This document shows, in pieces, positions 25,688 through 52,992 of a DNA stretch of 64,000 bases. Below the pieces are notes generated by a model, which was given only the letters and a program-made list of their open reading frames with translations, was not told the origin of the DNA and did no database searches. Location of the stretch: IMG/VR virus record IMGVR_UViG_3300001460_000004, positions 1 through 64,000 of that record. One strand, written 5' to 3'. Numbering within the stretch: position 1 is the first letter of the stretch; each line of letters begins with the position of its first letter. Both the position numbers and the translations under genes were made by a program.

Positions 25688-25693
25688 ATATGG

Positions 25694-28297: not shown

Positions 28298-29308
28298 ATG
28301 AGTGAAGATAGAGACGTTATTCCTACAGTTTTAGTAACAGGTGGATTAGGGTTAATTGGGCATCATGTTGTAAGTCAACTTGAAGAACAAGGCTATGATG
28401 TAGTTGTTACTGACACTAAGACCAACTACAACGGACTTATACCTAATGACGAACTCAACTATTTGATTGGCGAGCGTTCAAAGAAAATAAGAACGCAAGA
28501 AATATACAATGTTGATATTTGCGACTCTGGTCGTATGGAAGCTATTTTTAACAAATATCGTCCCGAAACAATTGTGCATTTAGCAAGTTTTCCAAGACAA
28601 AAAGTAGTAAATGCTAATCCTCAAAGTGGTAGTAGAACTATGAGTGAAGGATTACTTAACTTATTGGAACTTAGTGCCAAGTATAGTAGCAAACGATTTG
28701 TTTACATAAGCAGTAGTATGGTTTATGGTAGTTTTGAAGATGATGTTAAAGAAGATGCCGCAATGAATCCACAAGGACAATACGGTATTATGAAACTAGC
28801 TGGTGAATGGTTAGTTAAAGATTACACACGTAAATGTGGTATTGAGCATGTTATTATTCGCCCAAGTGCAGTTTATGGTCCTTTGGATGTACAAGATCGA
28901 GTTGTAAGTAAGTTTATGATCTCGGCAATGCAAGGCAAAGAGCTTAGTGTAAACGGTAAAAGTGAAACATTAGATTTTACGTATGTAACAGATGCAGCCG
29001 ACGGTGTTGTTGCAGCAGCAACTATTCCGCAAGCAGCCAACAATACATATAACATTACCAAAAGTCATAGTTGGACATTATATGATGCAGCCGAGTTAGC
29101 TGTAAAAATTGCTGGTAACGGAACAATAAATGTAAAAGACAAAGATATGGATTTTCCCAGCCGAGGTGCGTTAAATATTGATTCGGCTAGAGCTGATTTA
29201 GGATTTGACCCTAAAGTTGACTTAGAAGAAGGGTTTGAACGCTACTATGAATGGTTTAAAGATTCCGTTTACTGGTCTGAAAAAGCAGTACCTCAATCTC
29301 AAGACTGA
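28298..29308 (+). CDS. NAD-dependent NDP-sugar epimerase/dehydratase (extended SDR)
   Basis: VTGGLGLIG, SSSMVYG, YGIMK, RPSAVYGP, DFTYV. Confidence 0.93.
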   Translation: MSEDRDVIPTVLVTGGLGLIGHHVVSQLEEQGYDVVVTDTKTNYNGLIPNDELNYLIGERSKKIRTQEIYNVDICDSGRMEAIFNKYRPETIVHLASFPRQKVVNANPQSGSRTMSEGLLNLLELSAKYSSKRFVYISSSMVYGSFEDDVKEDAAMNPQGQYGIMKLAGEWLVKDYTRKCGIEHVIIRPSAVYGPLDVQDRVVSKFMISAMQGKELSVNGKSETLDFTYVTDAADGVVAAATIPQAANNTYNITKSHSWTLYDAAELAVKIAGNGTINVKDKDMDFPSRGALNIDSARADLGFDPKVDLEEGFERYYEWFKDSVYWSEKAVPQSQD

Positions 29309-30347
29309 AATACTCGACACAAGTGACGCTGTGTATCATAGCGGAAAACTGATTGACGGTAATCAAACTATTGAATTTGAAAATTGGCTTGCAAAGAAAA
29401 ATAATGTTCGTTATGCAATCACAATGCATAGCGGTACGCAAGCACTAGAAACTATTGCAAGATTTAATAAGAACAAACTTATTGTTGAAACTCCTCTAGT
29501 ATTACTTCCAACATTTACTTATATTGCAACTGCAAATGCATTTTTAACCGCTGGTTGGAAAGTTCAATTTGCTGATTGCAACAGCCACGGCGTGAGTACA
29601 TATACCAAAAATGAAATTGATGAAAGCATTGATGCCGCTGTATTGGTTGGAATTTTTGGCAAACAAGTCAACGATCCTTGGGAAGAACGTATACACAATA
29701 AAAATTGGAAACTTTCCAATACTGAATTAATAGAAGATGGTGCACAACATTGGTTATCAGCTGGATGTAAACGAGTTGCTGATACTGCTATTAGTTTTGA
29801 TCCAATGAAAAACTTTAACAGTTATGGCAACGGTGGTGCAGTTGTAACAAATGATATTGAATTGTACAACTTTTCTAATCACTTTCGTACAAACGGGAAA
29901 GACTGGCAACAAAGTTCACAGTACGGAACCAACAGTCGTATGAGTGAAATTGATTGTGCTCAAATGTTAGTAAAGAGTCGTTACATTGACAAATGGCAAA
30001 CTAAACGTCAAGAAATAGCAGAATATTGGATTGAAAGATTTACTGAAGCCCGGATTGAATGTCTAATAACACGAAGTGAATTAAAAAATCACGCTATAAG
30101 TAAATTTGTTATTAATATTGAAAATAGAAATGAAATAAAACGTAAATTGGATACAAGGCAAATAGAAACAAAGATACATTACCAAACACCTTTACACGAA
30201 AGATTTCCAGAGTTTAAAGGTCCTAAAGGAATGTGTACAGCAGGTGCGTTAGCTAGACATACGTTATCATTACCAATGTATCCAGAACTTACTGATCTTG
30301 AAGTTGAGTATATTGCTGATCAAGTAATTTCTTGTGTAGCCGGGTAA
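29247..30347 (+). CDS. DegT/DnrJ/EryC1/StrS PLP-dependent sugar aminotransferase
   Basis: SGTQAL, TYIAT, EDGAQ, SFDPMKN (catalytic Lys), LSLPMYP. Confidence 0.92.
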   Translation: MNGLKIPFTGLKKQYLNLKTEILDTSDAVYHSGKLIDGNQTIEFENWLAKKNNVRYAITMHSGTQALETIARFNKNKLIVETPLVLLPTFTYIATANAFLTAGWKVQFADCNSHGVSTYTKNEIDESIDAAVLVGIFGKQVNDPWEERIHNKNWKLSNTELIEDGAQHWLSAGCKRVADTAISFDPMKNFNSYGNGGAVVTNDIELYNFSNHFRTNGKDWQQSSQYGTNSRMSEIDCAQMLVKSRYIDKWQTKRQEIAEYWIERFTEARIECLITRSELKNHAISKFVINIENRNEIKRKLDTRQIETKIHYQTPLHERFPEFKGPKGMCTAGALARHTLSLPMYPELTDLEVEYIADQVISCVAG

Positions 30348-32106
30348 AGTGTTGTTTTAGCCAAGCCCAATCATAACTTTTCTTTAAATCTTCAAAATTT
30401 CCATCAACACTTGTATAAAATTCTTGTGCATTGTTTGCTCCTATTGCACTCCAGTCATGATTGCCGGTTGCTGTTAACCAACATTTTAAACGATATTGAT
30501 TTTCAATAGTTGTATTGTCATCTAGTAATTTTAATGTTTCTCTAAATGCAGTTCTCCAGGCCATCCAAGGATCAACTGCATAATGTGCAGTTCCACTTAA
30601 TATTGGGACTACTTCATGTAAATTATCTAATGTAAAGTCTAATCCATGCCCATTATTTGCAAGAACCAGTTCTTTATTGTATGCAATCATTGCCATGTGT
30701 CCATATTCTAATCCATTGATTGGATTGCGAGCATGAAATATATAGTGCTTGGGAGATTGTAAAAAGTCTGGTTGCCATTGCCAATTAAAATTAGATTCAA
30801 CTTCTAACTTAGCAAACACTGCAAAGAACCAAGGAGTGTTACTAGCTTTGGCTGCAGCATGGTAAGCGGCTACACGTCCATTAACACCGTCTATACGCAT
30901 AACTCGGTTGCTACAGGCGCTTGTACTGCGTTGTAGGGCATTATAATTTGCTTCTGCATTTGTTTCCCCGTTGCTAATAAAAACAATGTCTAAAGGTGTA
31001 TCTGTATAATTTTTAAAAGTTAAGTCTACATAAGGATAGTCGTATAATTGTGCAATAGTTCCAGCAACTGCATCTTTAGGTATTAGTGTTGTACTGCCAC
31101 TTGAAGTTAATGGAACAACAGCTCTAGTTTTTGATCTCCACAGTGGCATTGTAGGCACAGGAGGTAAATTAATTGTATGTTGGGTAGTAAACAACGCATA
31201 ATGCCCGGGCCATGCATGCTTTGCAATTTCATTTACGTGACTGTTGCTGTTGTGTTTTATAATATTTGGCACAGTACGAGGCACAATAATATCATCAACA
31301 AAGTTTAAATCGTACCATTCAAGCAATTCAAACTCTTGTATCTTATTTGTAAATGTTGGTACATGCATAAAAAAAGTGTCGCCAAACTTTTGTTCATTAC
31401 TAGCAAATACATGCAACATTTGATTTTGCCATGTTTCGGGATGCCAACTAAAATCAAAGCTACTGTAATCACAGCAATCACTGGTAATCCAAATATACTC
31501 TTTGTTACTATAATAGTTTGCAATGCGTTTTAGTGTACCTAAATAAGTGTCAAAAAATCTAAACGTTTTATCTATGTTTGTACAAGATGGTGCATTCGTG
31601 TGTGCAATGCTACAACGTATATCAGCAACGGCAACAGCTAGGCTATTACTTTGACTAACATACTTGTCATCCTTAGCACCAGGCATTGCATATATTGGTC
31701 CGCCTGTTTTTTGCCATTGAGTTCCAAACTTATATAAAAAAGCTGGACTGCTATAATCAGGATGCCAAGTGTAGTCAAAATCTTTAACTGTGCCTGTGTT
31801 GTCCCACAATGTCATATCAGTGTATGTGCGTAGCTGTGTGTTGTGGTAATGGGTATCCGTGTAGCCTTGTTTGGGTATTAGGTATGTTCCACTGTCTTTC
31901 TGCCACACACTGCCAAACGCATGTCTTTGTGTTGATTCCCATGGTTTTGGTTCATAAAGAAAATCATGCTGTTTGTAGTCAACTAAGTAATTGAGTATCC
32001 AAAAATACCTAGTGCGGGACAATGTTTGAGCATGAAGTATACTTTCAACACACATTTCGTGAGGCAATACCCCAGGTGCTTTTCCTATATAGAATACATC
32101 ATACAT
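30289..32106 (-). CDS. multi-module GT-A-like protein (paralog of 49903-50826)
   Basis: RIDGVNG..AYHAAA, NPINGLEYG and AWRTAFRE are shared with 49903-50826; repeated F.W.P..W modules. Confidence 0.6.
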   Translation of the reverse strand: MYDVFYIGKAPGVLPHEMCVESILHAQTLSRTRYFWILNYLVDYKQHDFLYEPKPWESTQRHAFGSVWQKDSGTYLIPKQGYTDTHYHNTQLRTYTDMTLWDNTGTVKDFDYTWHPDYSSPAFLYKFGTQWQKTGGPIYAMPGAKDDKYVSQSNSLAVAVADIRCSIAHTNAPSCTNIDKTFRFFDTYLGTLKRIANYYSNKEYIWITSDCCDYSSFDFSWHPETWQNQMLHVFASNEQKFGDTFFMHVPTFTNKIQEFELLEWYDLNFVDDIIVPRTVPNIIKHNSNSHVNEIAKHAWPGHYALFTTQHTINLPPVPTMPLWRSKTRAVVPLTSSGSTTLIPKDAVAGTIAQLYDYPYVDLTFKNYTDTPLDIVFISNGETNAEANYNALQRSTSACSNRVMRIDGVNGRVAAYHAAAKASNTPWFFAVFAKLEVESNFNWQWQPDFLQSPKHYIFHARNPINGLEYGHMAMIAYNKELVLANNGHGLDFTLDNLHEVVPILSGTAHYAVDPWMAWRTAFRETLKLLDDNTTIENQYRLKCWLTATGNHDWSAIGANNAQEFYTSVDGNFEDLKKSYDWAWLKQHFTRLHKKLLDQQYTQLQDQ

Positions 32107-33220
32107 GATTAGAATCGACGAAATTTATAATAATATATTCTGGCCTTTTATTGATAAAAATATTCGAAATACTCGAATGTTTTATTGTGATCCACCTGGT
32201 ACAACTCGTCCTGAAAATTTGTTTAATTATGGAAATGAAAGTATTGAGGACAAGTATATAATTTTTCATGATCAAGAACCAATACATTTGGATGTTCATT
32301 ACGACTTGTTTACAACAATTGATGCTAGTGTACAAGACTTGTGTGAAGGTAGTGGGGCACTGTTTAGCGGTTTGGTTAGCAGTGAGTTTCGAAGCGAGGC
32401 GGCTAAAAAAGTTTGTGATTTTTACGAACTTAATCATTACTATTATTTTTTCCATGGGTGGGCGGCGCTTGATTGGTACAGAGGGTATGATAAAACTTTT
32501 TTAATAAGTGCTCCAGAAGATCGCAAATTAAAATACAGCATGATAAACCCTAATCGAATTATAGGTGGTAAACGTGATCATCGTGTAATACTATTTTACA
32601 TGATGAACCAGCTAGGTGTCAAGAACTCATTGACGTCATTTCCACAAATTTGTCCGGAAGAGCAGTCTAATATACTAACAATTGCTCAACGCTTTAGTAA
32701 AAGATATCCTGACATCGTTAATATACTTAGCGAGCAAAATTTACCATTAGATTTTCCCAACGAATCCGGTCACCCTATGCACAGTTGTTGGTTAAGTTTA
32801 TTTGACTTGTGTGAACAAAGTTTGCTGCATGTTGTTACTGAAACAGTATTTTTTGGAAAACGCAATCATCTAACTGAAAAAACATTCAAACCTATATGTC
32901 TTAAAATGCCATTTGTACTAGCAAGCTCGGCTAACAGTCTAGATTATTTGCATCGATATGGATTTAAAACATTTAGTTCTATATGGGATGAAAGTTATGA
33001 TGACGAACAAGACGATTTTGTCAGATTAGAAAAAATTGCAAAATTACTTAAAGATATTGACAACCTAAGTCTTAAAGAACAAAATCAATTACACAAGCAT
33101 GCTATTCCAATTGTAGAGCACAACTTCAATTATTTTTATGGAGGTGAATTTGAACGTGTATTATGGGATGAGCTCAGTCGAATGTTACAACGTATGGAAA
33201 ACAATTTTTTATTTAAATGA
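32105..33220 (+). CDS. putative glycosyltransferase (GT-B/GT10-like)
   Basis: VVTETVF..LTEKTFKPI..PF..GFKTF..DESYD. Confidence 0.6.
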   Translation: MIRIDEIYNNIFWPFIDKNIRNTRMFYCDPPGTTRPENLFNYGNESIEDKYIIFHDQEPIHLDVHYDLFTTIDASVQDLCEGSGALFSGLVSSEFRSEAAKKVCDFYELNHYYYFFHGWAALDWYRGYDKTFLISAPEDRKLKYSMINPNRIIGGKRDHRVILFYMMNQLGVKNSLTSFPQICPEEQSNILTIAQRFSKRYPDIVNILSEQNLPLDFPNESGHPMHSCWLSLFDLCEQSLLHVVTETVFFGKRNHLTEKTFKPICLKMPFVLASSANSLDYLHRYGFKTFSSIWDESYDDEQDDFVRLEKIAKLLKDIDNLSLKEQNQLHKHAIPIVEHNFNYFYGGEFERVLWDELSRMLQRMENNFLFK

Positions 33221-34374
33221 TATTTGTTTATGATAATTTAGATCCTGTAACAGGAAAACCTATACCAAACTTAGCAGATCCTAATGCTAAAAACTGGGAC
33301 CAATCGTGGCCACGTGTTGTGAATTTAAGATTGTTAGAGTTTTTTGATCGTGCAGGATTACAATACAGTGTTACTGACACAAACAGCACAGGATGGTATC
33401 CTATAGCATTTAGTTGGTTTGATTTTGAAATTGATTATATTAAATTAATTCCAAAAGCAGTATTTGAACACATCCAAAACAATCGTATACAACTATTATT
33501 TTATTATCACGAAGGAGATAATCCTAAACTGATTAGTAAACGTATTGATGATTTATGCAAACAATGGAACTTGCCAGATAGTTGGCGGTTTATTAGTGCA
33601 AATACTAATGTAAGTACAGTTAAGAATGGTGTTTATTTTAATGACCATGTAAACTTTTTTGCTAGAATAAACAGACATCAAATTTTTACGCCAGATGTAT
33701 ATACAAAAGTATATACATTTACTTTGCTTAATCGTCATCATAAAAATTGGAGAGGTACTATTACTAGCCAGTTGTGGGGCAAAGGATTATTGATTGATGC
33801 ACTGTACAGTTATAATACTGCAAAAGATGTAATTGAACCTACTGATCATTTGGATAATCCAATATCACTAAGTGATCTAGACAATGGTATTGATTGGTAT
33901 AATACATTTAAATTTGAACAACCCATGTATGCTGACAACAACAATAGTGACTTACACAATAATCATTCACAAGTAAATCAATTTCTTTATACTAACAGCT
34001 ATTTTCAAGTTGTAATGGAAACTCATTTTGATAACGATGGCAGCAATGGTGTATTTTTAACTGAAAAAACTTATAAATGTATAAAGTATCAACAGCCGTT
34101 TGTAATTGCTAGCGGTGCATACAGTGTTGCACATTTACGTGATGAGGGCTACAATGTGTACGATGATGTTATTGATCATAGTTATGATAAAATCAAAGAT
34201 AATACACAAAGATGTATAGCACTAATAAATGAAATTCAAAGATTATCTAATATAGTGGGTCCATTATGGACAGCTCAAACAATGCGTACAAGCGAATACA
34301 ATGCATATAAATTTACCCAAGCATGTATTGAATCAGTAAATAATGTTTATAAGGAGTTATTATGTCAAAAATAA
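33217..34374 (+). CDS. putative glycosyltransferase (GT-B/GT10-like)
   Basis: VVMETHF..FLTEKTYK.I..PF..DHSYD. Confidence 0.6.
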   Translation: MIFVYDNLDPVTGKPIPNLADPNAKNWDQSWPRVVNLRLLEFFDRAGLQYSVTDTNSTGWYPIAFSWFDFEIDYIKLIPKAVFEHIQNNRIQLLFYYHEGDNPKLISKRIDDLCKQWNLPDSWRFISANTNVSTVKNGVYFNDHVNFFARINRHQIFTPDVYTKVYTFTLLNRHHKNWRGTITSQLWGKGLLIDALYSYNTAKDVIEPTDHLDNPISLSDLDNGIDWYNTFKFEQPMYADNNNSDLHNNHSQVNQFLYTNSYFQVVMETHFDNDGSNGVFLTEKTYKCIKYQQPFVIASGAYSVAHLRDEGYNVYDDVIDHSYDKIKDNTQRCIALINEIQRLSNIVGPLWTAQTMRTSEYNAYKFTQACIESVNNVYKELLCQK

Positions 34375-36223: not shown

Positions 36224-36235
36224 TAGTATTTTCTT

Positions 36236-38110: not shown

Positions 38111-38317
38111 TTACAACCTCCTTATTATTACTGTGCCATATCTTGGCCAGGATATTTCGCAACCAATTGTTTCGAGTGCATGTGTTACTAATTCAATCAT
38201 CTTATGGCTATTTCCGCATATAATAGTTAATGGTAACGCATGTTGATTTAAATACACAAAGTTTTCTACTTCGCGGTCAACTTGATAATGTCTTATGCCG
38301 TGCAAGTCTAATTGCAT
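38111..38317 (-). CDS. stand-alone Smr-domain protein
   Basis: LDLHG...IICGNS. Confidence 0.7.
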   Translation of the reverse strand: MQLDLHGIRHYQVDREVENFVYLNQHALPLTIICGNSHKMIELVTHALETIGCEISWPRYGTVIIRRL

Positions 38318-46803: not shown

Positions 46804-48220
46804 GGTACTTACATTCTTTCCACCAGTCTATCATTTCTGGAAATGTTGCTTTAAAATTTGTATTGCGTCTAGTATCGTGTTCTGTAAAAAACCTATAAAA
46901 GTCAGCACGATTTTGTTTTTGGTAATCTAAATCAAGCTCACTCCCTTTGCTCATCCATGTAATATCACGTTGCATACGTTGTACTTCATAGTCTTTAAAT
47001 CCATGAAATCTTGTTGCTTCTGTTTCCATATTAGATTTCATAAATTCTAGTATGCTTTGCATATAACTAACGTAGCTTGCCGGCAATAGTTGCAGACTTT
47101 GCCATGTGGGTTGTCTTAACAACGGAGTATCAAACCATATACGTTGATATGTCTTACTGTGTGTTTGCCGTAATTTTAATATGTTTTCAAGTAAAGTTTT
47201 TAAACTTGTGACGCTTAAATTATTCATTGTAATAATAAATGTTAAACTATTTCTCTCAGGAACATCTACTAGGTATTCGGTAACTCTATCCCACATTAAA
47301 TCAAAATTAAGACCATTACGCATGTATTCAGCTGGTTTACCCCACCCGTCAACGCTTACATATTGCATAAAGTGTTCTAATGTATCCGGTGTATTGCAAA
47401 GTTTTTGCAAGTATACTTTATATTTTTCCCATAACTTTTGTTCAACACTAAAATTACTAGTAGTAGATAAGTGCAAATTAGGTTTTGGATTATCTAATAC
47501 ATAATCAAAAACTCGATATGTATTTTTATCCATTATGGGTTCTCCGCCTGTCATTCTAAAATGTTCTAACTCTGGGTATAACTCAGGCCACCATTCCCAA
47601 AACGATTCCACATATGGATTGTGTTCTCTATTTGGGATTGGGCGTCTTTCTCCAGTAAAATATTCTGGTGCATTGTGCGGTTTTTTTGTAGGATATGCAC
47701 CACTGGCTTTACTTTCTTGCATCCAACTACTACTAAACTGTGGTGAACAATAACTGCATTTTAAATTACATACATTGTTAAAGTTAACTTCAACATAACT
47801 GGGATTTATATCTTTGAGACTATCACTTGTAATAATTGTATCAAAGTCTTTAGCTGCCCAAGGCTCTCCACTGCGATAACTTCTATCACTTAGTTGCCCG
47901 CTATCTTCAATTGCCCAACAATAACTACATTCTTTAGGACGAACACCCTCAAGCATTAACTTACGTTGCGACTTTTTATATGCGGTGTTGTGTAATCCAC
48001 TTCGACTGTTTTGTAAATCGCTTTGTTGTATTTTATGCAATGGTGGATGATAACAACTGTTGGTGTGCCCAGTTGGCAAATGCAAGCTCACTTGTTTCCA
48101 TTTGGCAAGACACATACTTGGACTGACTTTATTCAGCCTTTGTTGCATTAACTCTGCATCGCTTAAGAACTTGCTTTTGAAGTTAACGTCTGATTCGTCA
48201 CCTTTATTCATTTTAGCCAA
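46787..48220 (-). CDS. N-terminal twitch radical SAM enzyme
   Basis: CLAKW..SCYHP..CSYCW; CNLKCSYC; GGEP. Confidence 0.93.
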   Translation of the reverse strand: MAKMNKGDESDVNFKSKFLSDAELMQQRLNKVSPSMCLAKWKQVSLHLPTGHTNSCYHPPLHKIQQSDLQNSRSGLHNTAYKKSQRKLMLEGVRPKECSYCWAIEDSGQLSDRSYRSGEPWAAKDFDTIITSDSLKDINPSYVEVNFNNVCNLKCSYCSPQFSSSWMQESKASGAYPTKKPHNAPEYFTGERRPIPNREHNPYVESFWEWWPELYPELEHFRMTGGEPIMDKNTYRVFDYVLDNPKPNLHLSTTSNFSVEQKLWEKYKVYLQKLCNTPDTLEHFMQYVSVDGWGKPAEYMRNGLNFDLMWDRVTEYLVDVPERNSLTFIITMNNLSVTSLKTLLENILKLRQTHSKTYQRIWFDTPLLRQPTWQSLQLLPASYVSYMQSILEFMKSNMETEATRFHGFKDYEVQRMQRDITWMSKGSELDLDYQKQNRADFYRFFTEHDTRRNTNFKATFPEMIDWWKECKYHADNT

Positions 48221-49227
48221 TCTAAGTAGTTGTGGTTAGCACGTTGAGGAAAATAATTACTTTTTCCACCGTCTCTTTCAATATCTAATGTTAAACAATG
48301 CATACCTCCATCCCAAAAACCTTTGTGTGTAAAGTTACATTGTAGCACATTTATACCCAACTTGTCAAGGAATTCTAACAGCCTCGGGTTAGTGCTTATG
48401 CTCAATACTGTGTTGTTGTTAAGTACTAACATGTTAACACTAAACTGGGTTTCTTTATAATTGCCTACCCAATTCTGTGCATGTTTTTGTATGTGTTCTG
48501 CAAATTTGCCATTACCATTTACATTAGAATTTACCCACCATTCCCCAAAATGATCGTTACGGGCAGGCATCTCTTCTGGCATATGAAACACTTGCCAATT
48601 TGGAAAACTTTCTTTGTAATCTTGTTTCCAATGTGTTGTAACTATTACTCCTGGGGCAACTGGACAAAAAACACCATCGCTGTGTCCGCCAGTGCGTATC
48701 ATGTGTACTCGGTAATCCTGTGCCCACTTCAAAAACTCTATACTTACTTGCGGCATAACATGTTCATGACTTTCAGCATCAACAAAAATATCCTTGCCAA
48801 CACGTACAACACTAGGACCGCACAAACAGTTGTTATCTTCACCTGGCCTAGTTACAATTATTTCTCCTTCTAATTCTCTTAATGCATATTCCCAAGGATC
48901 TTTGTAACTTTCATCTAATTGATGATACAATGTATTTCCTAACACAAGTCCTCTATCACGTGGCATAATAGGTGGCTTAACAAGATATCCACTTGTATCA
49001 CAGTGCTGCCCTCTATTAACGCTATTAAAACTTGGACGAGTAACTTTTACCCCGTGTTCAACGAGTATTTTTTCAATGTTTTTTAAATCATTTTTTGTAG
49101 TTTCGGTTATTTCAATAAATGCTTCTGCTACATCTGGATTGTACTCACTGTAAAACTCTATAGGATATACATCTCCTAACCATACATGTTTTAATTGGTC
49201 CCATCCAGTGTGACTATTGATTTGCAT
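48208..49227 (-). CDS. amidinotransferase, second paralog
   Basis: WDQLKHVWLG, PRD, GGHSDG, WDGGMHCLT. Confidence 0.87.
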   Translation of the reverse strand: MQINSHTGWDQLKHVWLGDVYPIEFYSEYNPDVAEAFIEITETTKNDLKNIEKILVEHGVKVTRPSFNSVNRGQHCDTSGYLVKPPIMPRDRGLVLGNTLYHQLDESYKDPWEYALRELEGEIIVTRPGEDNNCLCGPSVVRVGKDIFVDAESHEHVMPQVSIEFLKWAQDYRVHMIRTGGHSDGVFCPVAPGVIVTTHWKQDYKESFPNWQVFHMPEEMPARNDHFGEWWVNSNVNGNGKFAEHIQKHAQNWVGNYKETQFSVNMLVLNNNTVLSISTNPRLLEFLDKLGINVLQCNFTHKGFWDGGMHCLTLDIERDGGKSNYFPQRANHNYLDWLK

Positions 49228-49906
49228 AATAAACTTTCCATACCTCGTCAAATAATTCGTTACTCTGGGCCTCTAGTTCACGTTGCATATTAACACAAAA
49301 TAAATTATAGTCATCATTAATATCTATAATTTGATCAGCATAGTCATCATTAACTTTTACATCTTGATAGTAACTCCAATGAAAATCAATAGTGTTCCAT
49401 GCACTTTCAACTGTTTGAATAAGTCCACTAAGTGGTGTATTGTTAGCAACTTCGTTCTGTCTTTTAACGTCTCTAAAATCTTTTTGAACCTCTTGATATA
49501 TATCAAATGCTAACTCATTTAATTGTTCTGCATTATTGCACTCAGGCCAACTTTCATCACGTATACTGTTGTAATGCTCAACAGGATCAATATCAGGTGC
49601 AGGTGCTTCTCGATATCTACCGTTAATATTCCATTCTCTACATAATGCGTCTTTAAGTTTTGTTTTTATTACTGTAATACGTGCTTTTGGATATGTTCTT
49701 CGTAAGAGTGCAGTATCTCTACAATGCGTTAACAAAAACGGTCTATCCCAAGACTTGTCTAGATAATACTTGTCGTTGCTGGTATATTCCTTTGCTTCGG
49801 AATGAAAATCAAAACTAGTATTGGGTGTTTTCCATTCTTTGTCAACTAAACAACGATAATAACGGTTTCCTCCTCCGCCAGGATAATAACTAATAATTTG
49901 CATCAC
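49214..49906 (-). CDS. hypothetical protein with a sulfotransferase-like N-terminus
   Basis: YYPGGGGN; internal YNSIRDESWP module. Confidence 0.5.
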   Translation of the reverse strand: MMQIISYYPGGGGNRYYRCLVDKEWKTPNTSFDFHSEAKEYTSNDKYYLDKSWDRPFLLTHCRDTALLRRTYPKARITVIKTKLKDALCREWNINGRYREAPAPDIDPVEHYNSIRDESWPECNNAEQLNELAFDIYQEVQKDFRDVKRQNEVANNTPLSGLIQTVESAWNTIDFHWSYYQDVKVNDDYADQIIDINDDYNLFCVNMQRELEAQSNELFDEVWKVYYANQ

Positions 49907-50826
49907 CAGCCCTCTGCTTTCCTTATTACATCAATTTCTTTTTTCATTATATCTAAATTAGTCCAATTTGATTGATAGTGGTGTTTAAAAAATTTACTAA
50001 CAGTTGAGTCAGCTATGTCAATGACAGGCAAATCTAATTGTACACTTAAAGCATTACTCACCTGTTGCATATCAACAGATTGATACTCACTGTAAATAGT
50101 TTCAAGGCTGTCAAATGATTGTACTTGAGTATAATCCCAGTCATTAAGCATTGTTAGCCAAGTGCCGTAGCGTGATCCAAGAATGGCTTGCTCACCGTAT
50201 TCAACGTCACGGCCTACATTGTGCCATATACTGAGATTGTCCATATTACGCTTATGTACTGCATCCTTAAATTCAACAACATTGGGTTTGCGTCCTCGGT
50301 TTAAGCACATTTTAACACCTTCTCTAAACCCTGCTCTCCAGGCGTGGAATGCACTTCCATTAGGGTAAGTTGTGCTATAACAATCATGCATTGCCCAATA
50401 CAGTGGATCAAAACAAAATTCTACATCTGTTTCATCATTGCCTAAACTATTTTCATGTGTACGCATGTTGTACACAAATTCTTTTGTCCAGCTGCTTAAT
50501 CCACCATTACCATATGTTAGTCCATTTATATGATTTTTTGCTCTCCATCTGAACACAGCACGTTCGCTTTCTAGGGAATCAAATCGTAAAGTTTGATTGA
50601 AAAAGTCCCAGTCTGGTAAATTGTCTCCATCAATTAATATAAACCGATCTGTGTTACTAGCATCAGCGGCAGCCTTGTGTGCAGCATCGCTTCCTTTAAC
50701 ACCATCTACACGTTCAGCCCACGGAATATGATTTCGTATGCTTATCCAAAATTCTTCTTTCTGAGGTTCATCATAGCTGAGATATATGCAGTCTAAATCT
50801 GCTACATCAACTGTTTTAATGTCCAT
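49903..50826 (-). CDS. GT-A fold glycosyltransferase
   Basis: SYDE, GVKG..AAHKAAA, FILIDGDN (DxD), YGNGG, AWRAGFREGVK. Confidence 0.75.
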   Translation of the reverse strand: MDIKTVDVADLDCIYLSYDEPQKEEFWISIRNHIPWAERVDGVKGSDAAHKAAADASNTDRFILIDGDNLPDWDFFNQTLRFDSLESERAVFRWRAKNHINGLTYGNGGLSSWTKEFVYNMRTHENSLGNDETDVEFCFDPLYWAMHDCYSTTYPNGSAFHAWRAGFREGVKMCLNRGRKPNVVEFKDAVHKRNMDNLSIWHNVGRDVEYGEQAILGSRYGTWLTMLNDWDYTQVQSFDSLETIYSEYQSVDMQQVSNALSVQLDLPVIDIADSTVSKFFKHHYQSNWTNLDIMKKEIDVIRKAEGW

Positions 50827-51146
50827 TGTTTTGCCTGTTCTGTGCTGCTTAAAAGTTCAACATGATGTTGATGTGTTGAGTACTCACCAGCATTGCTGGG
50901 TATAAGTTTATTTACGTGTACATCTAGGTTGATGTAATAAATTTTACTATCTTTAACAAATACATTTGAAGAATTTAAATTATACTGGTCTTGTGTAATT
51001 TCAATATAGTCTCCTGGTATGTCTTCCATAGTGTATACAATTGGTTCACCTGTTTGTTTGTTGTAATACAATCTCCAAAAAGGAACTATCTCTTCAGGCC
51101 AAACATAATTTTTCCAAAACTCTTCAAAGATCTCATTGTTGTTCAT
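50802..51146 (-). CDS. hypothetical protein
   Basis: Coupled ORF in the operon. Confidence 0.6.
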   Translation of the reverse strand: MNNNEIFEEFWKNYVWPEEIVPFWRLYYNKQTGEPIVYTMEDIPGDYIEITQDQYNLNSSNVFVKDSKIYYINLDVHVNKLIPSNAGEYSTHQHHVELLSSTEQAKQWTLKQLM

Positions 51147-51957
51147 ATTCTTTTATCCAATCTTTTATATAGTAATGAAATACTCCTTGCTGATGCACTG
51201 TATTAATTTTTAAACCAGTTGGTACTCTTTCCCAAACTAATTCACGTGTCCAATCGTTTGTTTGTGATTTAATAATGTGTTTTTTCATATGCACAATTGA
51301 TGGAGAATTTGTTAACGTAACTTTTTCTTTTCCAATTACAGTAGCAGCCATTGCATATACTACATCAGTTGTTGGTATAGTTTCGGGAAATTTTATTAAT
51401 GTTTTAAATTGCTCCCAGTTTTGAAATATATTTCTAACCAACTCAAAAAACTCTTTTGCAGTATTACTTAGCCTCCAATACACCATTGCATTATATGTAT
51501 CAGGTAAACAATTTTGATCAAATATACTTCGATAATGTCTGCTGTTGCTTGTGTTGTTATAATAATCTCGACAACCTGTACTAATTACAAGATCTCTTTT
51601 TCTAAATATATCCCAGTAATAATCAATATTACTAGTAACCAGGCAATCGGCTTCAAGTTTAATTGTTTCTCTAAACGGGCTAGTGTTAAACACTTGCCAA
51701 TCATTTGCAAATGCATTAGCATTTGGGTTTTGCATAATGCGTACATAATCAAACAATGGATCTTCAATTAATACATCAGTTAACAAGCAAACTTGATTGT
51801 ATGTGTTGTGTTGTTTAATACTGCCAGCCAGGCACTTTGCACACTCTATGTACTCGTTGCCTGTTGCTACAATCATATACCCTTGTTCACTTAGTACTGG
51901 CAACAATGTCTCCCAAGTGATGTTTGCCCATGGCATGAAAATCTGTATCTTGCACAA
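51133..51957 (-). CDS. GT8-like glycosyltransferase (true start probably near 51906)
   Basis: GY..A...Y..A..LA.SIK, SPFRETIKLEAD, TTDVVYA, VHMK. Confidence 0.65.
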   Translation of the reverse strand: MCKIQIFMPWANITWETLLPVLSEQGYMIVATGNEYIECAKCLAGSIKQHNTYNQVCLLTDVLIEDPLFDYVRIMQNPNANAFANDWQVFNTSPFRETIKLEADCLVTSNIDYYWDIFRKRDLVISTGCRDYYNNTSNSRHYRSIFDQNCLPDTYNAMVYWRLSNTAKEFFELVRNIFQNWEQFKTLIKFPETIPTTDVVYAMAATVIGKEKVTLTNSPSIVHMKKHIIKSQTNDWTRELVWERVPTGLKINTVHQQGVFHYYIKDWIKEYEQQ

Positions 51958-52687
51958 ATATATGTTTTCTAAGTTTTTTATTATCTTGAAACTGTATTTT
52001 AAACGTTTGATTGTCCTGGCTTGACAATTGATGTATTGGATCTATACTGGCCATACGCCAAGGTAGCACAGGCCATTTTCCAGTATTGCCGTATATTGTA
52101 TTCATTGCAATACTCAATGCAAAATCGTTACGGTATTGACTTTGGCCAATGCGATACAAATACCTATAATAGTCCCAATTGTTTTGTATTAACCCAATCA
52201 TTTCAAATATCAATTGTGCAGCACAGCTCTTTTTAAAATAAAGTACAGTAGCCCAACTCATGTTAAAATTAGTAGCACCAAAGCTATTGAGATGACTATA
52301 ATCTGTAACACCGGTTATGTCATATGCACTTCCCATTGGAAGTATGTCAGCATCAATATCAAGTACAACACGTAGCTGATCGCTGCATACTACATAGTCT
52401 GCATCTAGTAATATTGTTTGATCATACGGGCTAAGTTCATACACATTATATCTATTTTTATTCTGCCAGGCTACGGTTTCTTTTAAATCATCAAACCATC
52501 TCTCACCGTTTTCTTTAGGTGCTGCAACTTGTATTGTATTAGCATACTGAAGTTTTCTATCACTGTTGGTTATTACAGTGGTTGGTAAATTGAGATGTTT
52601 TTGTATTCGGTTTGCATTCCAATCTGCCATCTCTGTATAGGAAATAGCAGGATTGTCAAATGCAAATATGATTACACCTTGGCTCAT
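51887..52687 (-). CDS. GT8-like glycosyltransferase
   Basis: SPYDQTILLDADY (DxD), WATVLYF, RNDFALSIA, HAMGK. Confidence 0.7.
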   Translation of the reverse strand: MSQGVIIFAFDNPAISYTEMADWNANRIQKHLNLPTTVITNSDRKLQYANTIQVAAPKENGERWFDDLKETVAWQNKNRYNVYELSPYDQTILLDADYVVCSDQLRVVLDIDADILPMGSAYDITGVTDYSHLNSFGATNFNMSWATVLYFKKSCAAQLIFEMIGLIQNNWDYYRYLYRIGQSQYRNDFALSIAMNTIYGNTGKWPVLPWRMASIDPIHQLSSQDNQTFKIQFQDNKKLRKHIFVQDTDFHAMGKHHLGDIVASTK

Positions 52688-52992
52688 CTATTTTTACGTG
52701 ACATTTCGTATTCTTGTAACCAAGCGTTCATTTGTTCTTGCCAATGTTGCATTACTAAGTTCTTAAATGTTGATACATTTATTTTTATTGGAGTATCGTA
52801 TACATCCAATAATACAACTTCATCATCAGTGCATGCTGATAGCAAACTAATCAACTCTGGTCCAGTTTTCCACAAGCCATTATTGTGTGCAAAAAGCATC
52901 TTTGCTTGGTATTTTTCTTTTAGCACTCTACGGCTAGCACTGTGGTCAAAACGACTTCGTGCGTGTTGTACAACTTGTTCAATATTATTCAT
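52684..52992 (-). CDS. hypothetical protein, first gene of the modification operon
   Basis: ATG at 52992 lies immediately after a sigma70 -10 box. Confidence 0.65.
   Translation of the reverse strand: MNNIEQVVQHARSRFDHSASRRVLKEKYQAKMLFAHNNGLWKTGPELISLLSACTDDEVVLLDVYDTPIKINVSTFKNLVMQHWQEQMNAWLQEYEMSRKNR

What the first reader, a model, noticed from the sequence alone, without database searches (positions are those of the whole stretch)
28298..52992. ~25-kb phage glycan-hypermodification island with aminoglycoside-like enzymology
Seen: epimerase/dehydratase, DegT aminotransferase, two amidinotransferases, TobZ-type carbamoyltransferase, five twitch radical SAM enzymes, three GT10-like and four GT-A-like proteins, and MTAN. 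Most are translationally coupled and abut the tail genes. Known: the same families build aminoglycoside amino-sugars and cyclitols (BtrN twitch-rSAM dehydrogenase, StrS/BtrR aminotransferases, StrB1 amidinotransferase, TobZ). Inference: iterative oxidation, transamination, amidination and carbamoylation give a cationic, guanidinylated oligosaccharide. It could be attached to virion proteins (the adjacent S/T-rich fibres), to the host surface or to DNA, or released as a small molecule. I know of no characterised phage pathway with this composition; this is the best candidate for an undescribed system.
Basis: partly seen in the sequence, partly recalled or inferred. Interest (0 to 1): 0.9.

Follow-up and report, generated by a model that had tools for sequence, protein, structure and literature searches.

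The report
Fibre-linked radical-SAM glycan island in phage
An abundant, uncultured aquatic jumbo phage carries, next to its tail-fibre genes, a tightly packed 25-kb gene block of five uncharacterised radical-SAM enzymes plus sugar-transfer, carbamoyl- and amidino-transfer enzymes; it most likely builds an unusual decorated sugar coat, probably for a virion fibre, and no one has yet tested what such blocks make.

Summary

**Confirmed genes**
- One NDP-sugar epimerase/dehydratase.
- One DegT aminotransferase.
- Two amidinotransferases.
- One NovN/TobZ-type O-carbamoyltransferase.
- One MTAN-like nucleosidase.
- Five radical-SAM paralogues, all in NCBIfam NF033640. Their twitch domain is N-terminal, unlike BtrN.

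**Weaker calls:** the "GT10-like" and "GT-A-like" assignments rest on motifs and marginal profile or fold matches.

**Conserved arm (window 36505-52992):** eighteen consecutive gene junctions overlap or abut. The arm runs on from the fibre genes on the same strand. In relatives sampled by R3 and, independently, by the GT-A-like gene, the order FIB-ST330-s118-GT8b-GT8a-s114-GTA-R5-R4-R3-R2-R1-U354-carbamoyltransferase is kept. At least 600 IMG/VR contigs carry the GT-A-like gene.

**Variable arm (28298-36223):** epimerase, aminotransferase, amidinotransferases, GT10-like genes and kinase vary between relatives. The "aminoglycoside-like" chemistry is therefore accessory, not core.

**Related cases**
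- N-twitch radical-SAM arrays sit beside Pfam-significant glycosyltransferases in two other phage lineages and one bacterium.
- In Bdellovibrionota the arrays stand without them.
- Similar modules were noted, uncharacterised, in Campylobacter phage CP220 (2010) and cyanophage S-SCSM2R (2025).

**Best reading (about 0.4):** a cytoplasmic pathway that puts a radical-tailored, carbamoylated glycan on the S/T-rich fibre protein.

The parts
28298..29308 (+). EPI: NDP-sugar epimerase/dehydratase (extended SDR); variable arm
   Evidence: Pfam Epimerase 2.5e-47, GDP_Man_Dehyd 3.6e-39. Nearest solved structures are UDP-Glc 4-epimerase 8e-31, UXS and RmlB. Present in only some relatives.
29247..30347 (+). 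AT: DegT/DnrJ/EryC1-type PLP sugar aminotransferase; the start is 29235 (TTG) or 29247 (ATG); variable arm
   Evidence: Pfam 3.7e-49. Best NCBIfam model is PseC at 9e-34, below its cutoff. Candidate starts.
30289..32106 (-). D605: 605-aa protein whose C-terminal part (residues 372-527) is paralogous to the N-terminal DxD half of GTA
   Evidence: blastp to the 49903 protein, 30% identity, E 2e-9. No significant Pfam hit. Present in some relatives.
32105..33220 (+). F10a: member of the 'GT10-like' paralogue family; function not shown
   Evidence: Paralogy. No Pfam hit and no PDB hit. The nearest named ESM-Atlas clusters are Glyco_transf_10 at 0.78-0.79, a lead only. Structural neighbours include phage fusions to methyltransferase or epimerase domains.
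33217..34374 (+). F10b: second member of the same family; 4-nt overlap with F10a
34362..35399 (+). AMD1: amidinotransferase (AGAT/StrB1 superfamily)
   Evidence: Family profile against AGAT 1e-24, SxtG 2e-20, StrB1 5e-17. A Cys near the C-terminus is invariant. Homologous to CP220 CPT_0086, E 4e-11.
35390..36223 (-). KIN: zeta-toxin/AAA_33-type P-loop kinase with a hydrophobic N-terminus; found only in this genome among the sampled relatives
   Evidence: Pfam Zeta_toxin 4.7e-12, AAA_33 1.3e-10. Absent from relatives. Hydropathy maximum 1.83 at residue 19. No PDB sequence match.
36505..38010 (-). CBT: O-carbamoyltransferase (NodU/CmcH/NovN/TobZ family); last gene of the conserved coupled run
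   Evidence: Carbam_trans_C 7e-47, Carbam_trans_N 1.6e-39. NovN 1e-50, GdmN 1e-44, TobZ 1e-29. Conserved in relatives.
38317..38883 (-). MTN: MTAN-like nucleosidase, probably clearing 5'-deoxyadenosine made by the radical-SAM enzymes (inferred)
   Evidence: PNP_UDP_1 8e-14. Nucleosidase and MTAN models at 3.5e-23 and 3.8e-20, below their curated cutoffs. Present in part of the relatives, there placed between R2 and R1.
39068..40132 (-). U354: conserved 354-aa protein with a confidently predicted fold that has no known relative
   Evidence: No Pfam hit and no PDB sequence match. AF2 pLDDT 86.5, pTM 0.86. Best Foldseek PDB hit E 0.49. BFVD hits are all uncharacterised phage proteins, including one from Agrobacterium phage Atu_ph07. 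670 cluster representatives at E<=1e-3.
40125..41432 (-). R1: N-terminal-twitch radical-SAM enzyme, orthologue group 1
   Evidence: NF033640 4e-86, 290 bits. Clade support 100. Contains two N bases at 40455 and 40469.
41419..42630 (-). R2: N-twitch radical-SAM enzyme, orthologue group 2
   Evidence: NF033640 2.6e-101. Clade support 99. More than 7600 database homologues; the best 120 are 66-88% identical.
42627..44333 (-). R3: N-twitch radical-SAM enzyme with an extra N-terminal extension of about 170 aa
   Evidence: NF033640 2e-122, matching residues 175-570. Clade support 98.
44330..45667 (-). R4: N-twitch radical-SAM enzyme, R4/R5 subfamily
   Evidence: NF033640 1e-89. 32% identical to R5. 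Clade support 99.
45667..46803 (-). F10c: third 'GT10-like' paralogue, inserted between R5 and R4
46787..48211 (-). R5: N-twitch radical-SAM enzyme
   Evidence: NF033640 2e-93. Clade support 100.
48208..49227 (-). AMD2: second amidinotransferase; variable in relatives
   Evidence: 26.6% identical to the S-SCSM2R 'glycine amidinotransferase', E 1e-21.
49214..49903 (-). u230: 229-aa protein of unknown function; variable in relatives
   Evidence: No credible family hit. Found in only one other sampled locus.
49903..50826 (-). GTA: the most conserved island protein; carries an invariant DGDN (DxD-type) motif; GT-A-like glycosyltransferase candidate
   Evidence: 73% mean column identity, D66-G67-D68-N69 invariant. 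The top Foldseek hits are GT-A / NDP-sugar-transferase folds but weak, E 0.04-1. An ESM-Atlas neighbour cluster is auto-named 'Glycosyltransferase 2-like' at 0.99. At least 600 IMG/VR contigs carry a homologue.
50802..51146 (-). s114: conserved small protein, function unknown
51133..51936 (-). G8a: GT8-like GT-A candidate
   Evidence: phrog_1903 4e-14. Family profile against glycogenin-2, E 0.026. hhalign to the K566 Pfam-GT8 protein, 61% probability, E 8e-5. Asp of the DxD motif (D97) and a downstream His (H251) invariant.
51887..52687 (-). G8b: paralogue of G8a
52684..52992 (-). s118: conserved small protein and first gene of the coupled run
53092..54084 (-). ST330: 330-aa protein with 32% Ser+Thr; the proposed glycan acceptor (inferred)
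   Evidence: Composition. S+T is 25-35% in 25 relatives against 12% for all ORFs. Always directly upstream of s118.
54137..55531 (-). FIB: tail-fibre-like protein with a C-terminal intramolecular-chaperone-type domain
   Evidence: Peptidase_G2 IMC domain 4.7e-5, just below cutoff. PHROG tail-fibre families 3.7e-7 and 4.6e-6.
56335..64000 (-). Giant virion structural protein; runs off the window, and JGI calls it at 4837 aa
   Evidence: phrog_10938 5.6e-73..
7546..8766 (-). R6: a sixth N-twitch radical-SAM gene, outside the island
   Evidence: Radical_SAM 3.4e-8. hhalign to the R3-family profile, 99.8% probability, E 4e-29.

Best explanation
The island is a two-armed glycan-building and glycan-tailoring gene block belonging to the tail-fibre module of an abundant aquatic jumbo phage.

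Conserved arm (s118 to the carbamoyltransferase, window 52992 down to 36505, minus strand). It is read in the same direction as the fibre genes just upstream and is translationally coupled throughout. It encodes:
- three soluble DxD-type (GT-A/GT8-like) transferases;
- five distinct N-terminal-twitch radical-SAM enzymes;
- an orphan-fold protein (U354);
- an O-carbamoyltransferase.
The MTAN-like nucleosidase also sits in this run, but only part of the relatives have it.

Variable arm (28298-36223), plus insertions inside the conserved run. It supplies strain-specific extras: an NDP-sugar epimerase/dehydratase and aminotransferase (amino sugar), amidinotransferases (guanidino groups), GT10-like proteins and a kinase.

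Proposed mechanism, inferred and not shown:
1. Host NDP-sugars are used in the cytoplasm.
2. The GT-A-like enzymes put sugars on Ser/Thr of the S/T-rich 330-aa fibre protein (ST330), and perhaps on neighbouring fibre proteins.
3. The radical-SAM enzymes each carry out one radical step on the sugars, such as C-H oxidation, epimerisation, dehydration or C-C bond formation.
4. The nucleosidase removes inhibitory 5'-deoxyadenosine.
5. The carbamoyltransferase caps a hydroxyl.
6. The variable genes diversify the glycan between strains, much as O-antigen loci do.
For: Shown:
- Enzyme identities for the epimerase, aminotransferase, amidinotransferases, carbamoyltransferase, nucleosidase and radical-SAM enzymes.
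- 18 consecutive junctions of 0 nt or less, and a shared strand with the fibre genes.
- The order FIB-ST330-s118-G8b-G8a-s114-GTA-R5-R4-R3-R2-R1-U354-CBT is kept in about 40 relatives sampled by R3.
- In an independent sample taken by GTA, 50 of 51 sufficiently long loci hold both the fibre/GT block and R5, R4 and R3.
- R1 to R5 are separate, well-supported orthologue clades.
- ST330 is 25-35% Ser+Thr in all relatives, against a 12% background.
- No island protein has a convincing transmembrane segment, and there is no flippase, polymerase or exporter, so the acceptor is reachable from the cytoplasm.

The link between radical-SAM arrays and glycosyltransferases recurs elsewhere:
- Vibrio phage K566 interleaves four N-twitch radical-SAM genes with two Pfam-significant GT8 genes.
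- A distant IMG/VR lineage (L051) has a GT7+lectin protein directly before an eight-gene radical-SAM array.
- A Fluviicola locus joins three N-twitch radical-SAM genes with a carbamoyltransferase and a GT4 fusion.
- Campylobacter phage CP220 has five radical-SAM genes, a homologous amidinotransferase and two NDP-sugar-transferase-like genes.

Precedent, from the literature:
- Glycans have been observed on mycobacteriophage capsid and tail-tube proteins (Freeman et al. 2023, as summarised in PMC12619734).
- The S-SCSM2R amidinotransferase homologue was detected in a virion proteome (PMC12801897; homology).
Against: - None of the glycosyltransferase calls inside the island is statistically solid. 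GTA reaches Foldseek E>=0.04 with TM<0.3. G8a/b reach E 0.026 and 61% hhalign probability. F10 has no hit at all.
- The substrate of the NF033640 family is unknown.
- In Bdellovibrionota the same R3/R4/R5-type arrays lie among housekeeping genes with no glycosyltransferase nearby. In Paenibacillus a single member sits in an ACP/KS/KR cluster. The array may therefore act on something other than a glycan.
- All relatives that share the fibre adjacency belong to one lineage, so the synteny may be inherited rather than functional.
- In K566 the cluster is not next to fibre genes but near LpxC and PagP.
- No glycan, transcript timing or protein modification has been observed. The metatranscriptome contigs come mostly from relatives and do not prove transcription.
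Confidence: 0.4

Rival explanations
1. Host-envelope remodelling. The soluble GT8/GT-A-like enzymes and tailoring enzymes modify the host's lipid-linked LPS/LOS core, or another envelope glycan, at the cytoplasmic face during infection. Host transporters then export it. The effect would be to block superinfection or to stop progeny adsorbing to debris.
For: - To my knowledge GT8 is the family of LPS-core transferases, which are peripheral proteins without transmembrane helices, so the lack of membrane proteins does not exclude this.
- In Vibrio phage K566 the radical-SAM/GT8 cluster lies a few genes from LpxC and PagP homologues.
- In cyanophage S-SCSM2R the amidinotransferase homologue sits beside KdsA/KdsB and several glycosyltransferases.
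- The Fluviicola locus looks like a polysaccharide locus, with an ABC transporter, a methyltransferase and a GT4-UbiA fusion.
Against: - In this lineage the block is welded to the fibre genes on the same strand in 50 of 51 independent loci.
- No lipid A or Kdo genes, initiating transferase, flippase or ligase are in the island.
Confidence: 0.2
2. Radical protein maturation. The five twitch radical-SAM enzymes act directly on a virion protein (ST330, FIB or the giant protein) as RiPP-type maturases do, introducing epimerisation, cross-links or C-H functionalisation. The transferases then add sugars or other groups.
For: - To my knowledge most characterised SPASM/twitch radical-SAM enzymes modify peptides or proteins.
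- Weak NCBIfam hits go to peptide maturases such as PapB, WgkB, StsB and SkfB.
- anSME and SkfB are among the nearest solved structures.
- The genes adjoin the candidate substrate proteins.
Against: - No RRE/PqqD-like recognition domain and no leader-type peptide was detected.
- ST330 and FIB each have a single Cys, which excludes sactionine-type chemistry.
- Bacterial contexts are polysaccharide- or lipid-like, or housekeeping, and none looks RiPP-like.
- K566 and L051 couple the arrays to bona fide glycosyltransferases.
Confidence: 0.12
3. Small-molecule product. The enzymes make a free carbamoylated, guanidinylated sugar or cyclitol-type metabolite, either aminoglycoside-like or a nucleotide analogue. 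It would act on the host or on competitors, or be packaged in the virion.
For: - The family set resembles natural-product tailoring enzymes: NovN/TobZ-type carbamoyltransferase, StrB1/SxtG-type amidinotransferases, DegT and a BtrN-type twitch module.
- The Bdellovibrionota arrays stand without glycosyltransferases, next to a Cof-type HAD phosphatase.
- The radical-SAM core is nearest to viperin and MoaA, which act on nucleotides.
- The authors of the S-SCSM2R paper read similar genes as 'antibiotic synthesis genes'.
Against: - No cyclitol synthase, scaffold-forming enzyme, exporter or self-resistance gene is present.
- The amination and amidination genes are dispensable among relatives.
- The tight linkage to structural genes goes unexplained.
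Confidence: 0.1
4. DNA hypermodification. The transferases and tailoring enzymes decorate phage DNA bases with a modified glycan to escape restriction.
For: - Phage glycosyltransferases are known to hypermodify DNA (Pyle et al. 2024, cited in PMC12619734).
- To my knowledge P-loop kinases and radical-SAM enzymes take part in known thymidine hypermodification pathways.
- A P-loop kinase is present here.
Against: - No base-hydroxymethylase, DNA-binding module or nucleotide-metabolism gene lies in or next to the island.
- The kinase is unique to this genome.
- The block lies in the structural module, not the replication module.
- Only 64 kb of the 230-kb contig could be inspected.
Confidence: 0.06

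Closest known systems
Campylobacter phage CP220/CPt10 'interchangeable module' (Timms et al. 2010, PMC2853527)
   Same: Five radical-SAM genes, one amidinotransferase and two ~260-aa NDP-sugar-transferase-like genes lie in one co-directional cluster. The amidinotransferase CPT_0086 is homologous to AMD1, E 4e-11. The function has never been determined.
   Different: The CP220 radical-SAM proteins are shorter (249-342 aa), have the radical-SAM domain at the N-terminus, and show no full-length BLAST similarity to R1-R5; only one 28-residue match appeared. CP220 has no carbamoyltransferase and no U354. Its module sits after baseplate genes, not fibre genes.
Vibrio phage K566/K567 radical-SAM/GT8 cluster (annotated genomes, no functional study found)
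   Same: Four true N-twitch radical-SAM paralogues, 21-25% identical to R1-R5, are interleaved with two Pfam-significant GT8 proteins and a GT4-like protein. These are cultured phages, so they can serve as an experimental proxy.
   Different: No carbamoyltransferase, amidinotransferase or U354 was found by BLAST. The cluster lies among NAD-salvage genes and LpxC/PagP genes, not next to fibres.
Mycobacteriophage virion O-glycosylation (Freeman et al. 2023, as cited in PMC12619734)
   Same: Glycans decorate virion structural proteins, the same class of target proposed here for ST330.
   Different: To my knowledge those systems use a few ordinary glycosyltransferases. They have no radical-SAM, carbamoyl- or amidino-transferases, and the acceptors are capsid and tail-tube C-termini.
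Aminoglycoside/aminocoumarin tailoring enzymes (BtrN, StrB1, TobZ/NovN, StrS/BtrR)
   Same: The families match for the carbamoyltransferase, amidinotransferases and aminotransferase. The radical-SAM auxiliary-cluster module aligns to the BtrN twitch domain, E 1e-4.
   Different: The twitch domain is N-terminal rather than C-terminal. There is no cyclitol synthase, exporter or resistance gene. The amination and amidination genes are not conserved in relatives.
Cyanophage S-SCSM2R 'antibiotic synthesis genes' (PMC12801897)
   Same: The paper reports a DegT-type aminotransferase, a radical-SAM gene and amidinotransferases in a T4-like marine phage. One amidinotransferase homologue (26.6% identity) was found in the virion proteome.
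   Different: The genes are scattered, with a single radical-SAM gene and no five-gene array, no U354 and no carbamoyltransferase in the region examined. The interpretation in the paper is speculative.

Membership tests
NCBIfam NF033640 (N_Twi_rSAM, twitch domain-containing radical SAM protein) | Full-length HMM score above the curated cutoff of 170 bits | tested here: met
   The five proteins score 289.6, 339.6, 409.1, 301.5 and 313.6 bits.
NCBIfam NF033640 (N_Twi_rSAM) | CX3CX2C radical-SAM cluster motif, plus a Cys-rich twitch module placed N-terminal to it | tested here: met
   C123/C127/C130 and C9/C28/C74/C77 are invariant in the alignment of the five paralogues with the K566 proteins. 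Pfam places SPASM before Radical_SAM.
BtrN-type twitch radical-SAM sugar dehydrogenase | C-terminal twitch domain following the radical-SAM core | tested here: not met
   The twitch module is N-terminal: profile positions 9-82 align to BtrN residues 163-238.
BtrN-type twitch radical-SAM sugar dehydrogenase | Core closest to BtrN; acts on an amino-cyclitol substrate | tested here: not met
   The core region scores best against viperin (3e-5) and anSME (5e-4), and BtrN matches only over the twitch. The substrate cannot be tested with these tools.
Amidinotransferase (AGAT/StrB1/SxtG, pentein fold) | Profile-level homology over the catalytic domain | tested here: met
   E 1e-24 to 5e-17 against AGAT, SxtG, HsvA and StrB1.
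Amidinotransferase (AGAT/StrB1/SxtG, pentein fold) | Catalytic Cys near the C-terminus, with His and Asp partners | tested here: inconclusive
   C319, H190 and D154/D158/D192 are invariant in the family alignment. A residue-by-residue match to the AGAT triad was not printed.
O-carbamoyltransferase (NodU/CmcH/NovN/TobZ) | Both Carbam_trans_N and Carbam_trans_C domains present | tested here: met
   1.6e-39 and 7.3e-47; NovN 1e-50. The N-domain match starts at profile position 122, so the N-terminus is shortened.
MTA/SAH nucleosidase (MTAN) | Score above the curated equivalog cutoff | tested here: not met
   The best models score 82.3 bits (cutoff 129) and 72.3 bits (cutoff 161). The fold family PNP_UDP_1 is met at 8e-14. 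It is MTAN-like, not a proven MTAN.
Glycosyltransferase family 10 (fucosyltransferase) | Match to Pfam PF00852 or to a solved GT10 structure | tested here: not met
   None of 17 family members hits PF00852, even at E<=1. No PDB hit at E<=10. The ESM-Atlas lead is only 0.79. The NxxR...TEK-type motif resemblance is matched from my recollection of GT10 motifs.
Glycosyltransferase family 8 (for G8a/G8b) | Match to Pfam PF01501, or profile homology to a verified GT8 | tested here: inconclusive
   No Pfam hit. Glycogenin-2 E 0.026. hhalign to the K566 GT8 protein gives 61% probability, E 8e-5, over the N-terminal 100 residues.
Glycosyltransferase family 8 (for G8a/G8b) | DxD motif and a downstream metal-binding His | tested here: met
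   D97 and H251 are invariant across 25 sequences, including CP220 CPT_0088 and CPT_0089.
GT-A fold glycosyltransferase (for GTA, 49903) | Rossmann-like N-terminal half with DxD; structural match to GT-A enzymes | tested here: inconclusive
   DGDN is invariant. The model has pLDDT 73. The top Foldseek hits are GT-A and nucleotidyltransferase folds, but at E 0.04-1 and TM<0.3.
Phage virion-glycosylation system | Glycosyltransferase genes embedded in the structural module, next to a Ser/Thr-rich virion protein | tested here: met
Phage virion-glycosylation system | Glycan demonstrated on a virion protein | not testable with these tools
   Requires virions and mass spectrometry.
Aminoglycoside-type biosynthetic gene cluster | Cyclitol-forming enzyme (2-deoxy-scyllo-inosose or inositol-phosphate synthase), exporter and self-resistance gene | tested here: not met
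   Pfam scans of the principal island ORFs, including all of 100 aa or more, found none. No transmembrane proteins.

The most novel reading that the evidence does not exclude
The five N-terminal-twitch radical-SAM enzymes and the orphan-fold U354 form a previously unknown five-step radical pathway. It would make a new class of modified sugar, or a modified residue on a fibre protein, that is displayed on the virions of one of the most abundant aquatic jumbo-phage lineages. This would be the first radical-SAM-dependent virion modification. Predatory Bdellovibrionota keep the same array as a stand-alone module, so the array may also be a portable tool shared between phages and bacterial predators.
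Probability: 0.25. Interest if true: 0.9.

Novelty: new variant of a known kind. Interest (0 to 1): 0.75.

Why it matters
- **An untested enzyme family.** NF033640 is a large radical-SAM family with no characterised member in the papers searched. Here it occurs as five fixed orthologues in a defined operon, with clear candidate partners and a candidate acceptor. That gives enzymologists a concrete system to test.
- **Ecological reach.** The lineage is very common. More than 7600 database homologues of R2 were found, with the best 120 at 66% identity or higher, and at least 600 IMG/VR contigs carry the GT-A-like gene. Whatever the island makes is therefore widespread in marine, fresh and brackish waters.
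- **A new layer of phage-host specificity.** If the product decorates the fibres, it would add strain-variable, chemically exotic fibre glycans to what is known about phage-host recognition.
- **Older puzzles.** It would also explain the 'many radical-SAM genes' puzzle raised for Campylobacter phages in 2010 and the 'antibiotic genes' reported in cyanophages in 2025.
- **A way to test it.** Cultured proxies exist: Vibrio phages K566/K567 and Campylobacter phage CP220.

Tried and rejected
- Megablast of 17 kb of the island against GenBank phages found no match.
- Pfam on every member of the F10 and G8 family alignments found nothing meaningful.
- Profile searches against PDB for U354 and F10 found nothing, even at E<=10 for F10.
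- hhalign of F10 against a cyanophage GT11 protein was not significant.
- hhalign of U354 against the protein that follows the array in L051 showed they are unrelated; that protein is another radical-SAM enzyme.
- ESM-Atlas search for U354 gave only scores of 0.46 or below.
- Fusion proteins with a C-terminal U354 domain (712-775 aa) were checked as a Rosetta-stone clue. Their N-terminal halves have no Pfam hit and no similarity to any island protein.
- The first genome-collection scan, using an alignment of all paralogues, failed because the alignment was too diverse. It was redone with a closer alignment.
- The first six to seven 'bacterial' hits (L053-L059) are phage contigs binned into MAGs, since they carry the whole island. 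They were not used as bacterial context.
- Sigma-70 promoter and terminator scans found fewer sites than in shuffled sequence and were uninformative.
- No RNA run holds this DNA. Metatranscriptome contigs come mostly from relatives, pile up on the conserved GTA gene, and do not prove transcription.
- The 'moraphage' jumbo-phage paper was checked as a possible description of this lineage. It mentions no radical-SAM genes and predicts Bacteroidota hosts, so no link could be made.
- A 7-deazaguanine (Que) pathway was considered, because amidinotransferase and radical-SAM genes co-occur in that literature. It was rejected: the amidinotransferases here are AGAT-type, and no QueC/QueD/DpdA-type hit appeared in the ORFs scanned.

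Full report
**What is there**

The window is the first 64 kb of a 230-kb IMG/VR contig, IMGVR_UViG_3300001460_000004, and window coordinates equal contig coordinates. Between 28298 and 52992 lie about 27 genes in two arms.

- **Epimerase/dehydratase (28298):** an extended-SDR NDP-sugar enzyme, Pfam 2.5e-47. Its nearest solved relatives are UDP-glucose 4-epimerase, UDP-glucuronate decarboxylase and dTDP-glucose 4,6-dehydratase.
- **Aminotransferase (29235):** DegT/DnrJ/EryC1 type, 3.7e-49.
- **Carbamoyltransferase (36505):** both characteristic domains are present. Strong sequence matches to NovN (1e-50), GdmN (1e-44) and TobZ (1e-29).
- **Nucleosidase (38317):** PNP_UDP_1 fold. It scores as a nucleosidase/MTAN at 1e-20 to 1e-23, but below NCBI's curated cutoffs.
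- **Amidinotransferases (34362 and 48208):** two paralogues, 29% identical. Their family profile matches AGAT, SxtG, HsvA and StrB1 at 1e-24 to 5e-17.
- **Radical-SAM enzymes (40125, 41419, 42627, 44330, 46787):** five paralogues. All belong to NCBIfam NF033640, far above its cutoff.

**The radical-SAM enzymes**

In all five the auxiliary-cluster (twitch) module lies N-terminal to the CX3CX2C core. This is the opposite order to BtrN. A family profile aligns its first ~80 positions to the C-terminal twitch domain of BtrN (E 1e-4). Its core aligns best to viperin (3e-5), anSME (5e-4), SkfB and MoaA. No paper in the library describes this family. A sixth member lies outside the island at 7546-8766.

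**The weak calls**

- **"GT10-like" trio (32105, 33217, 45667):** a real paralogue family. It has no Pfam hit for any of 17 members, no PDB hit even at E<=10, and no hhalign match to a phage GT11. What remains is a motif resemblance (FLNGxxRxHR and ETxF...TEKxxKP), which I match from memory to the alpha-1,3-fucosyltransferase motifs, and a sub-threshold ESM-Atlas lead of 0.79. Its structural neighbours include phage proteins fused to methyltransferase or epimerase domains.
- **The 307-aa protein at 49903:** the best conserved protein of the island, at 73% mean column identity, with an invariant DGDN motif. Its AlphaFold model (pLDDT 73) finds mostly GT-A or nucleotidyltransferase folds at the top of the list, but only at E 0.04-1. 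An ESM-Atlas neighbour cluster is auto-named "glycosyltransferase 2-like".
- **The pair at 51133 and 51887 (phrog_1903):** an invariant Asp of the DxD motif and a downstream His, a marginal profile match to glycogenin-2 (E 0.026), and a 61%-probability hhalign match to a Pfam-verified GT8 protein of Vibrio phage K566.
- **The 354-aa protein at 39068 (U354):** no sequence relatives of known function. It has a confident predicted fold (pLDDT 86.5) with no PDB neighbour. Its only structural relatives are uncharacterised phage proteins.

I therefore rate the observation as partly confirmed.

**Anatomy**

Using the public gene calls for this contig, the minus-strand run from s118 (start 52992) to the carbamoyltransferase (end 36505) has 18 consecutive junctions of 0 to -50 nt.

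Directly upstream, on the same strand, lie the following genes:
- a 330-aa protein with 32% Ser+Thr (53092-54084);
- a tail-fibre-like protein with a C-terminal intramolecular-chaperone-type domain (54137-55531);
- a 199-aa protein;
- a giant virion structural protein, called at 4837 aa.

None of the island proteins has a convincing transmembrane segment. There is no flippase, polymerase, initiating transferase or exporter.

**Comparative genomics**

A scan of IMG/VR with R3 gave 51 loci. About 40 share the order FIB-ST330-s118-G8b-G8a-s114-GTA-[variable]-R5-[variable]-R4-R3-R2-[MTAN]-R1-U354-[variable]-CBT. This is followed by a variable set drawn from amidinotransferase, F10, D605, aminotransferase and epimerase.

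Of the 80 loci kept, 51 were at least 19 kb long. All 51 carry FIB, ST330, G8a, G8b and GTA, and 50 also carry R5, R4 and R3.

A tree shows R1 to R5 as five separate, well-supported orthologue clades across relatives.

It is met in part for the genes that gave the island its "aminoglycoside-like" look. Epimerase, aminotransferase, amidinotransferases, kinase and F10 copies come and go.

The lineage is very abundant. R2 has more than 7600 database homologues, and the best 120 are all 66-88% identical.

**Contexts elsewhere**

- **GenBank phages:** only Vibrio phages K566/K567 and Ralstonia phage RsoM2USA (and, at E 0.1, Vibrio phage F86), plus fragments of a marine single-cell virus record, carry detectable N-twitch homologues.
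- **Vibrio phage K566:** four such genes are interleaved with two Pfam-significant GT8 genes and a GT4-like gene, a few genes from LpxC and PagP homologues.
- **A distant IMG/VR lineage (L049/L051):** a GT7+lectin-domain protein lies immediately before an array of eight radical-SAM genes. A cytidylyltransferase-HD protein and the terminase follow.
- **Fluviicola:** three N-twitch genes sit with a carbamoyltransferase, a GT4-UbiA fusion, PhyH/WelO5 oxygenases, an ABC ATPase and a methyltransferase.
- **Paenibacillus:** a single member sits in an ACP/ketosynthase/GT2 cluster.
- **Agaribacillus:** the gene is an orphan.
- **An unclassified bacterium:** seven radical-SAM genes form an array with an asparagine synthase.
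- **Bdellovibrionota:** R3-, R4- and R5-like paralogues occur together, but among housekeeping genes and without glycosyltransferases.

The link between radical-SAM arrays and glycosyltransferases is thus recurrent in phages but not universal.

**Literature**

- Timms et al. (2010, PMC2853527) described in Campylobacter phages CP220 and CPt10 an "interchangeable module" with five radical-SAM genes and a putative glycine amidinotransferase.
- The CP220 record also shows two NDP-sugar-transferase-like genes there. Its amidinotransferase is homologous to AMD1, but its radical-SAM proteins are of a different, shorter type.
- A 2025 paper on cyanophage S-SCSM2R (PMC12801897) called a DegT-type enzyme, a radical-SAM enzyme and an amidinotransferase "antibiotic synthesis genes". 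It found a glycine amidinotransferase, a 26.6%-identical homologue of AMD2, in the virion proteome.
- None of these modules has been characterised.

**Interpretation**

I commit, at about 0.4, to a cytoplasmic pathway that builds a radical-tailored, O-carbamoylated glycan on a virion fibre protein. In this genome the glycan would also be aminated and amidinated. The most likely acceptor is the S/T-rich 330-aa protein.

What is shown:
- the enzyme families;
- the operon structure;
- the conserved linkage to the fibre genes;
- the S/T-rich composition, 25-35% in all relatives;
- the lack of export machinery.

What is inferred:
- that the DxD proteins are glycosyltransferases;
- that the radical-SAM enzymes act on the sugars;
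- that the nucleosidase removes 5'-deoxyadenosine, which to my knowledge is a known role of MTAN with radical-SAM enzymes;
- that ST330 is the acceptor.

Taken more loosely, [quoted passage not shown] deserves about 0.65.

Rivals, with my confidence in each:
- host LPS/LOS-core remodelling, 0.2, favoured by the K566 and cyanophage contexts;
- direct radical maturation of fibre proteins, 0.12;
- a free small molecule, 0.1, favoured by the Bdellovibrionota arrays and the natural-product-type tailoring enzymes;
- DNA hypermodification, 0.06.

**Expression evidence**

No public RNA run holds this DNA. Metatranscriptome contigs of relatives map mainly to the conserved GT-A-like gene. One 269-nt contig is 99% identical within G8b. 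Such contigs can derive from DNA carry-over, and contigs carry no strand information. I count this as weak.

**Verdict**

This is a real, conserved and very widespread phage gene island. Its core is an uncharacterised five-member radical-SAM array plus an orphan-fold protein, a carbamoyltransferase and GT-A-like proteins. It belongs to a known kind of system, phage-encoded glycosylation, but in a new variant. Nothing in the work needed to be referred.

Noticed in passing
window 15190-15538 (+): The phage encodes a permuted tmRNA of the alphaproteobacterial type: Rfam alpha_tmRNA at 132 bits and tmRNA_permuted at 111 bits. ARAGORN reads the tag peptide as ANDNYAPAMAIAA. This suggests an alphaproteobacterial host for this 36%-GC jumbo phage. 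MAG binning of relatives is inconsistent, naming Haliscomenobacter, Legionellales, Rickettsiales and Verrucomicrobia.
   Followed up: partly
window 7546-8766 (-): A sixth N-terminal-twitch radical-SAM gene lies 30 kb from the island (hhalign 99.8%). In the tree it groups loosely with R2-like extras of relatives, on a long branch.
   Followed up: partly
window 56335-64000 (-), running off the window: A giant virion structural protein, called at 4837 aa in the public record, with phrog_10938 at 5.6e-73. The frame stays open to the window end, and no in-frame stop was seen there.
   Followed up: partly
window 23978-27031 (+): A MoxR/CobS-like AAA ATPase (phrog_1297, 1.5e-101), followed after two small ORFs by a DUF2201 metallopeptidase/VWA protein. 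Such pairs are, to my knowledge, common in marine T4-like phages.
   Followed up: no
window 8626-9696 (+): A probable endolysin: glycoside hydrolase family 19 plus a peptidoglycan-binding domain. Its listed ORF overlaps the start region of the divergent radical-SAM gene by about 140 nt.
   Followed up: no
window 3930-5145 (+); 5808-5897 (+): A class-I glutamine amidotransferase and a cupin protein lie side by side. A 90-nt tRNA is called Ser with anticodon ACT by ARAGORN, and a tRNA-Trp sits at 1741-1814.
   Followed up: no
window 40455, 40469, 42939 (and seven other stretches): Single N bases in the assembly fall inside R1 and R3 and give X residues in their translations. They do not interrupt the frames.
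   Followed up: yes
L049 and L051 (IMG/VR), about 870-13630: A more distant phage lineage carries seven N-twitch radical-SAM genes in tandem plus one further radical-SAM gene. A GT7+laminin-G-lectin protein precedes them, and a 1285-aa cytidylyltransferase-HD protein and the terminase follow.
   Followed up: partly
L143 (Bacteriovoracaceae MAG) 8698-14723; L144 (Oligoflexia MAG) 3182-8765: Predatory Bdellovibrionota carry four- to five-gene arrays containing R3-, R4- and R5-type paralogues. The arrays sit among housekeeping genes with no glycosyltransferase nearby. The same array type is thus shared by phages and bacterial predators.
   Followed up: partly
proteins P0207, P0212, P0218, P0219, P0222, P0227, P0252: The U354 fold also occurs as the C-terminal half of 712-775-aa proteins. 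Their ~400-aa N-terminal halves match no Pfam family and no island protein.
   Followed up: partly
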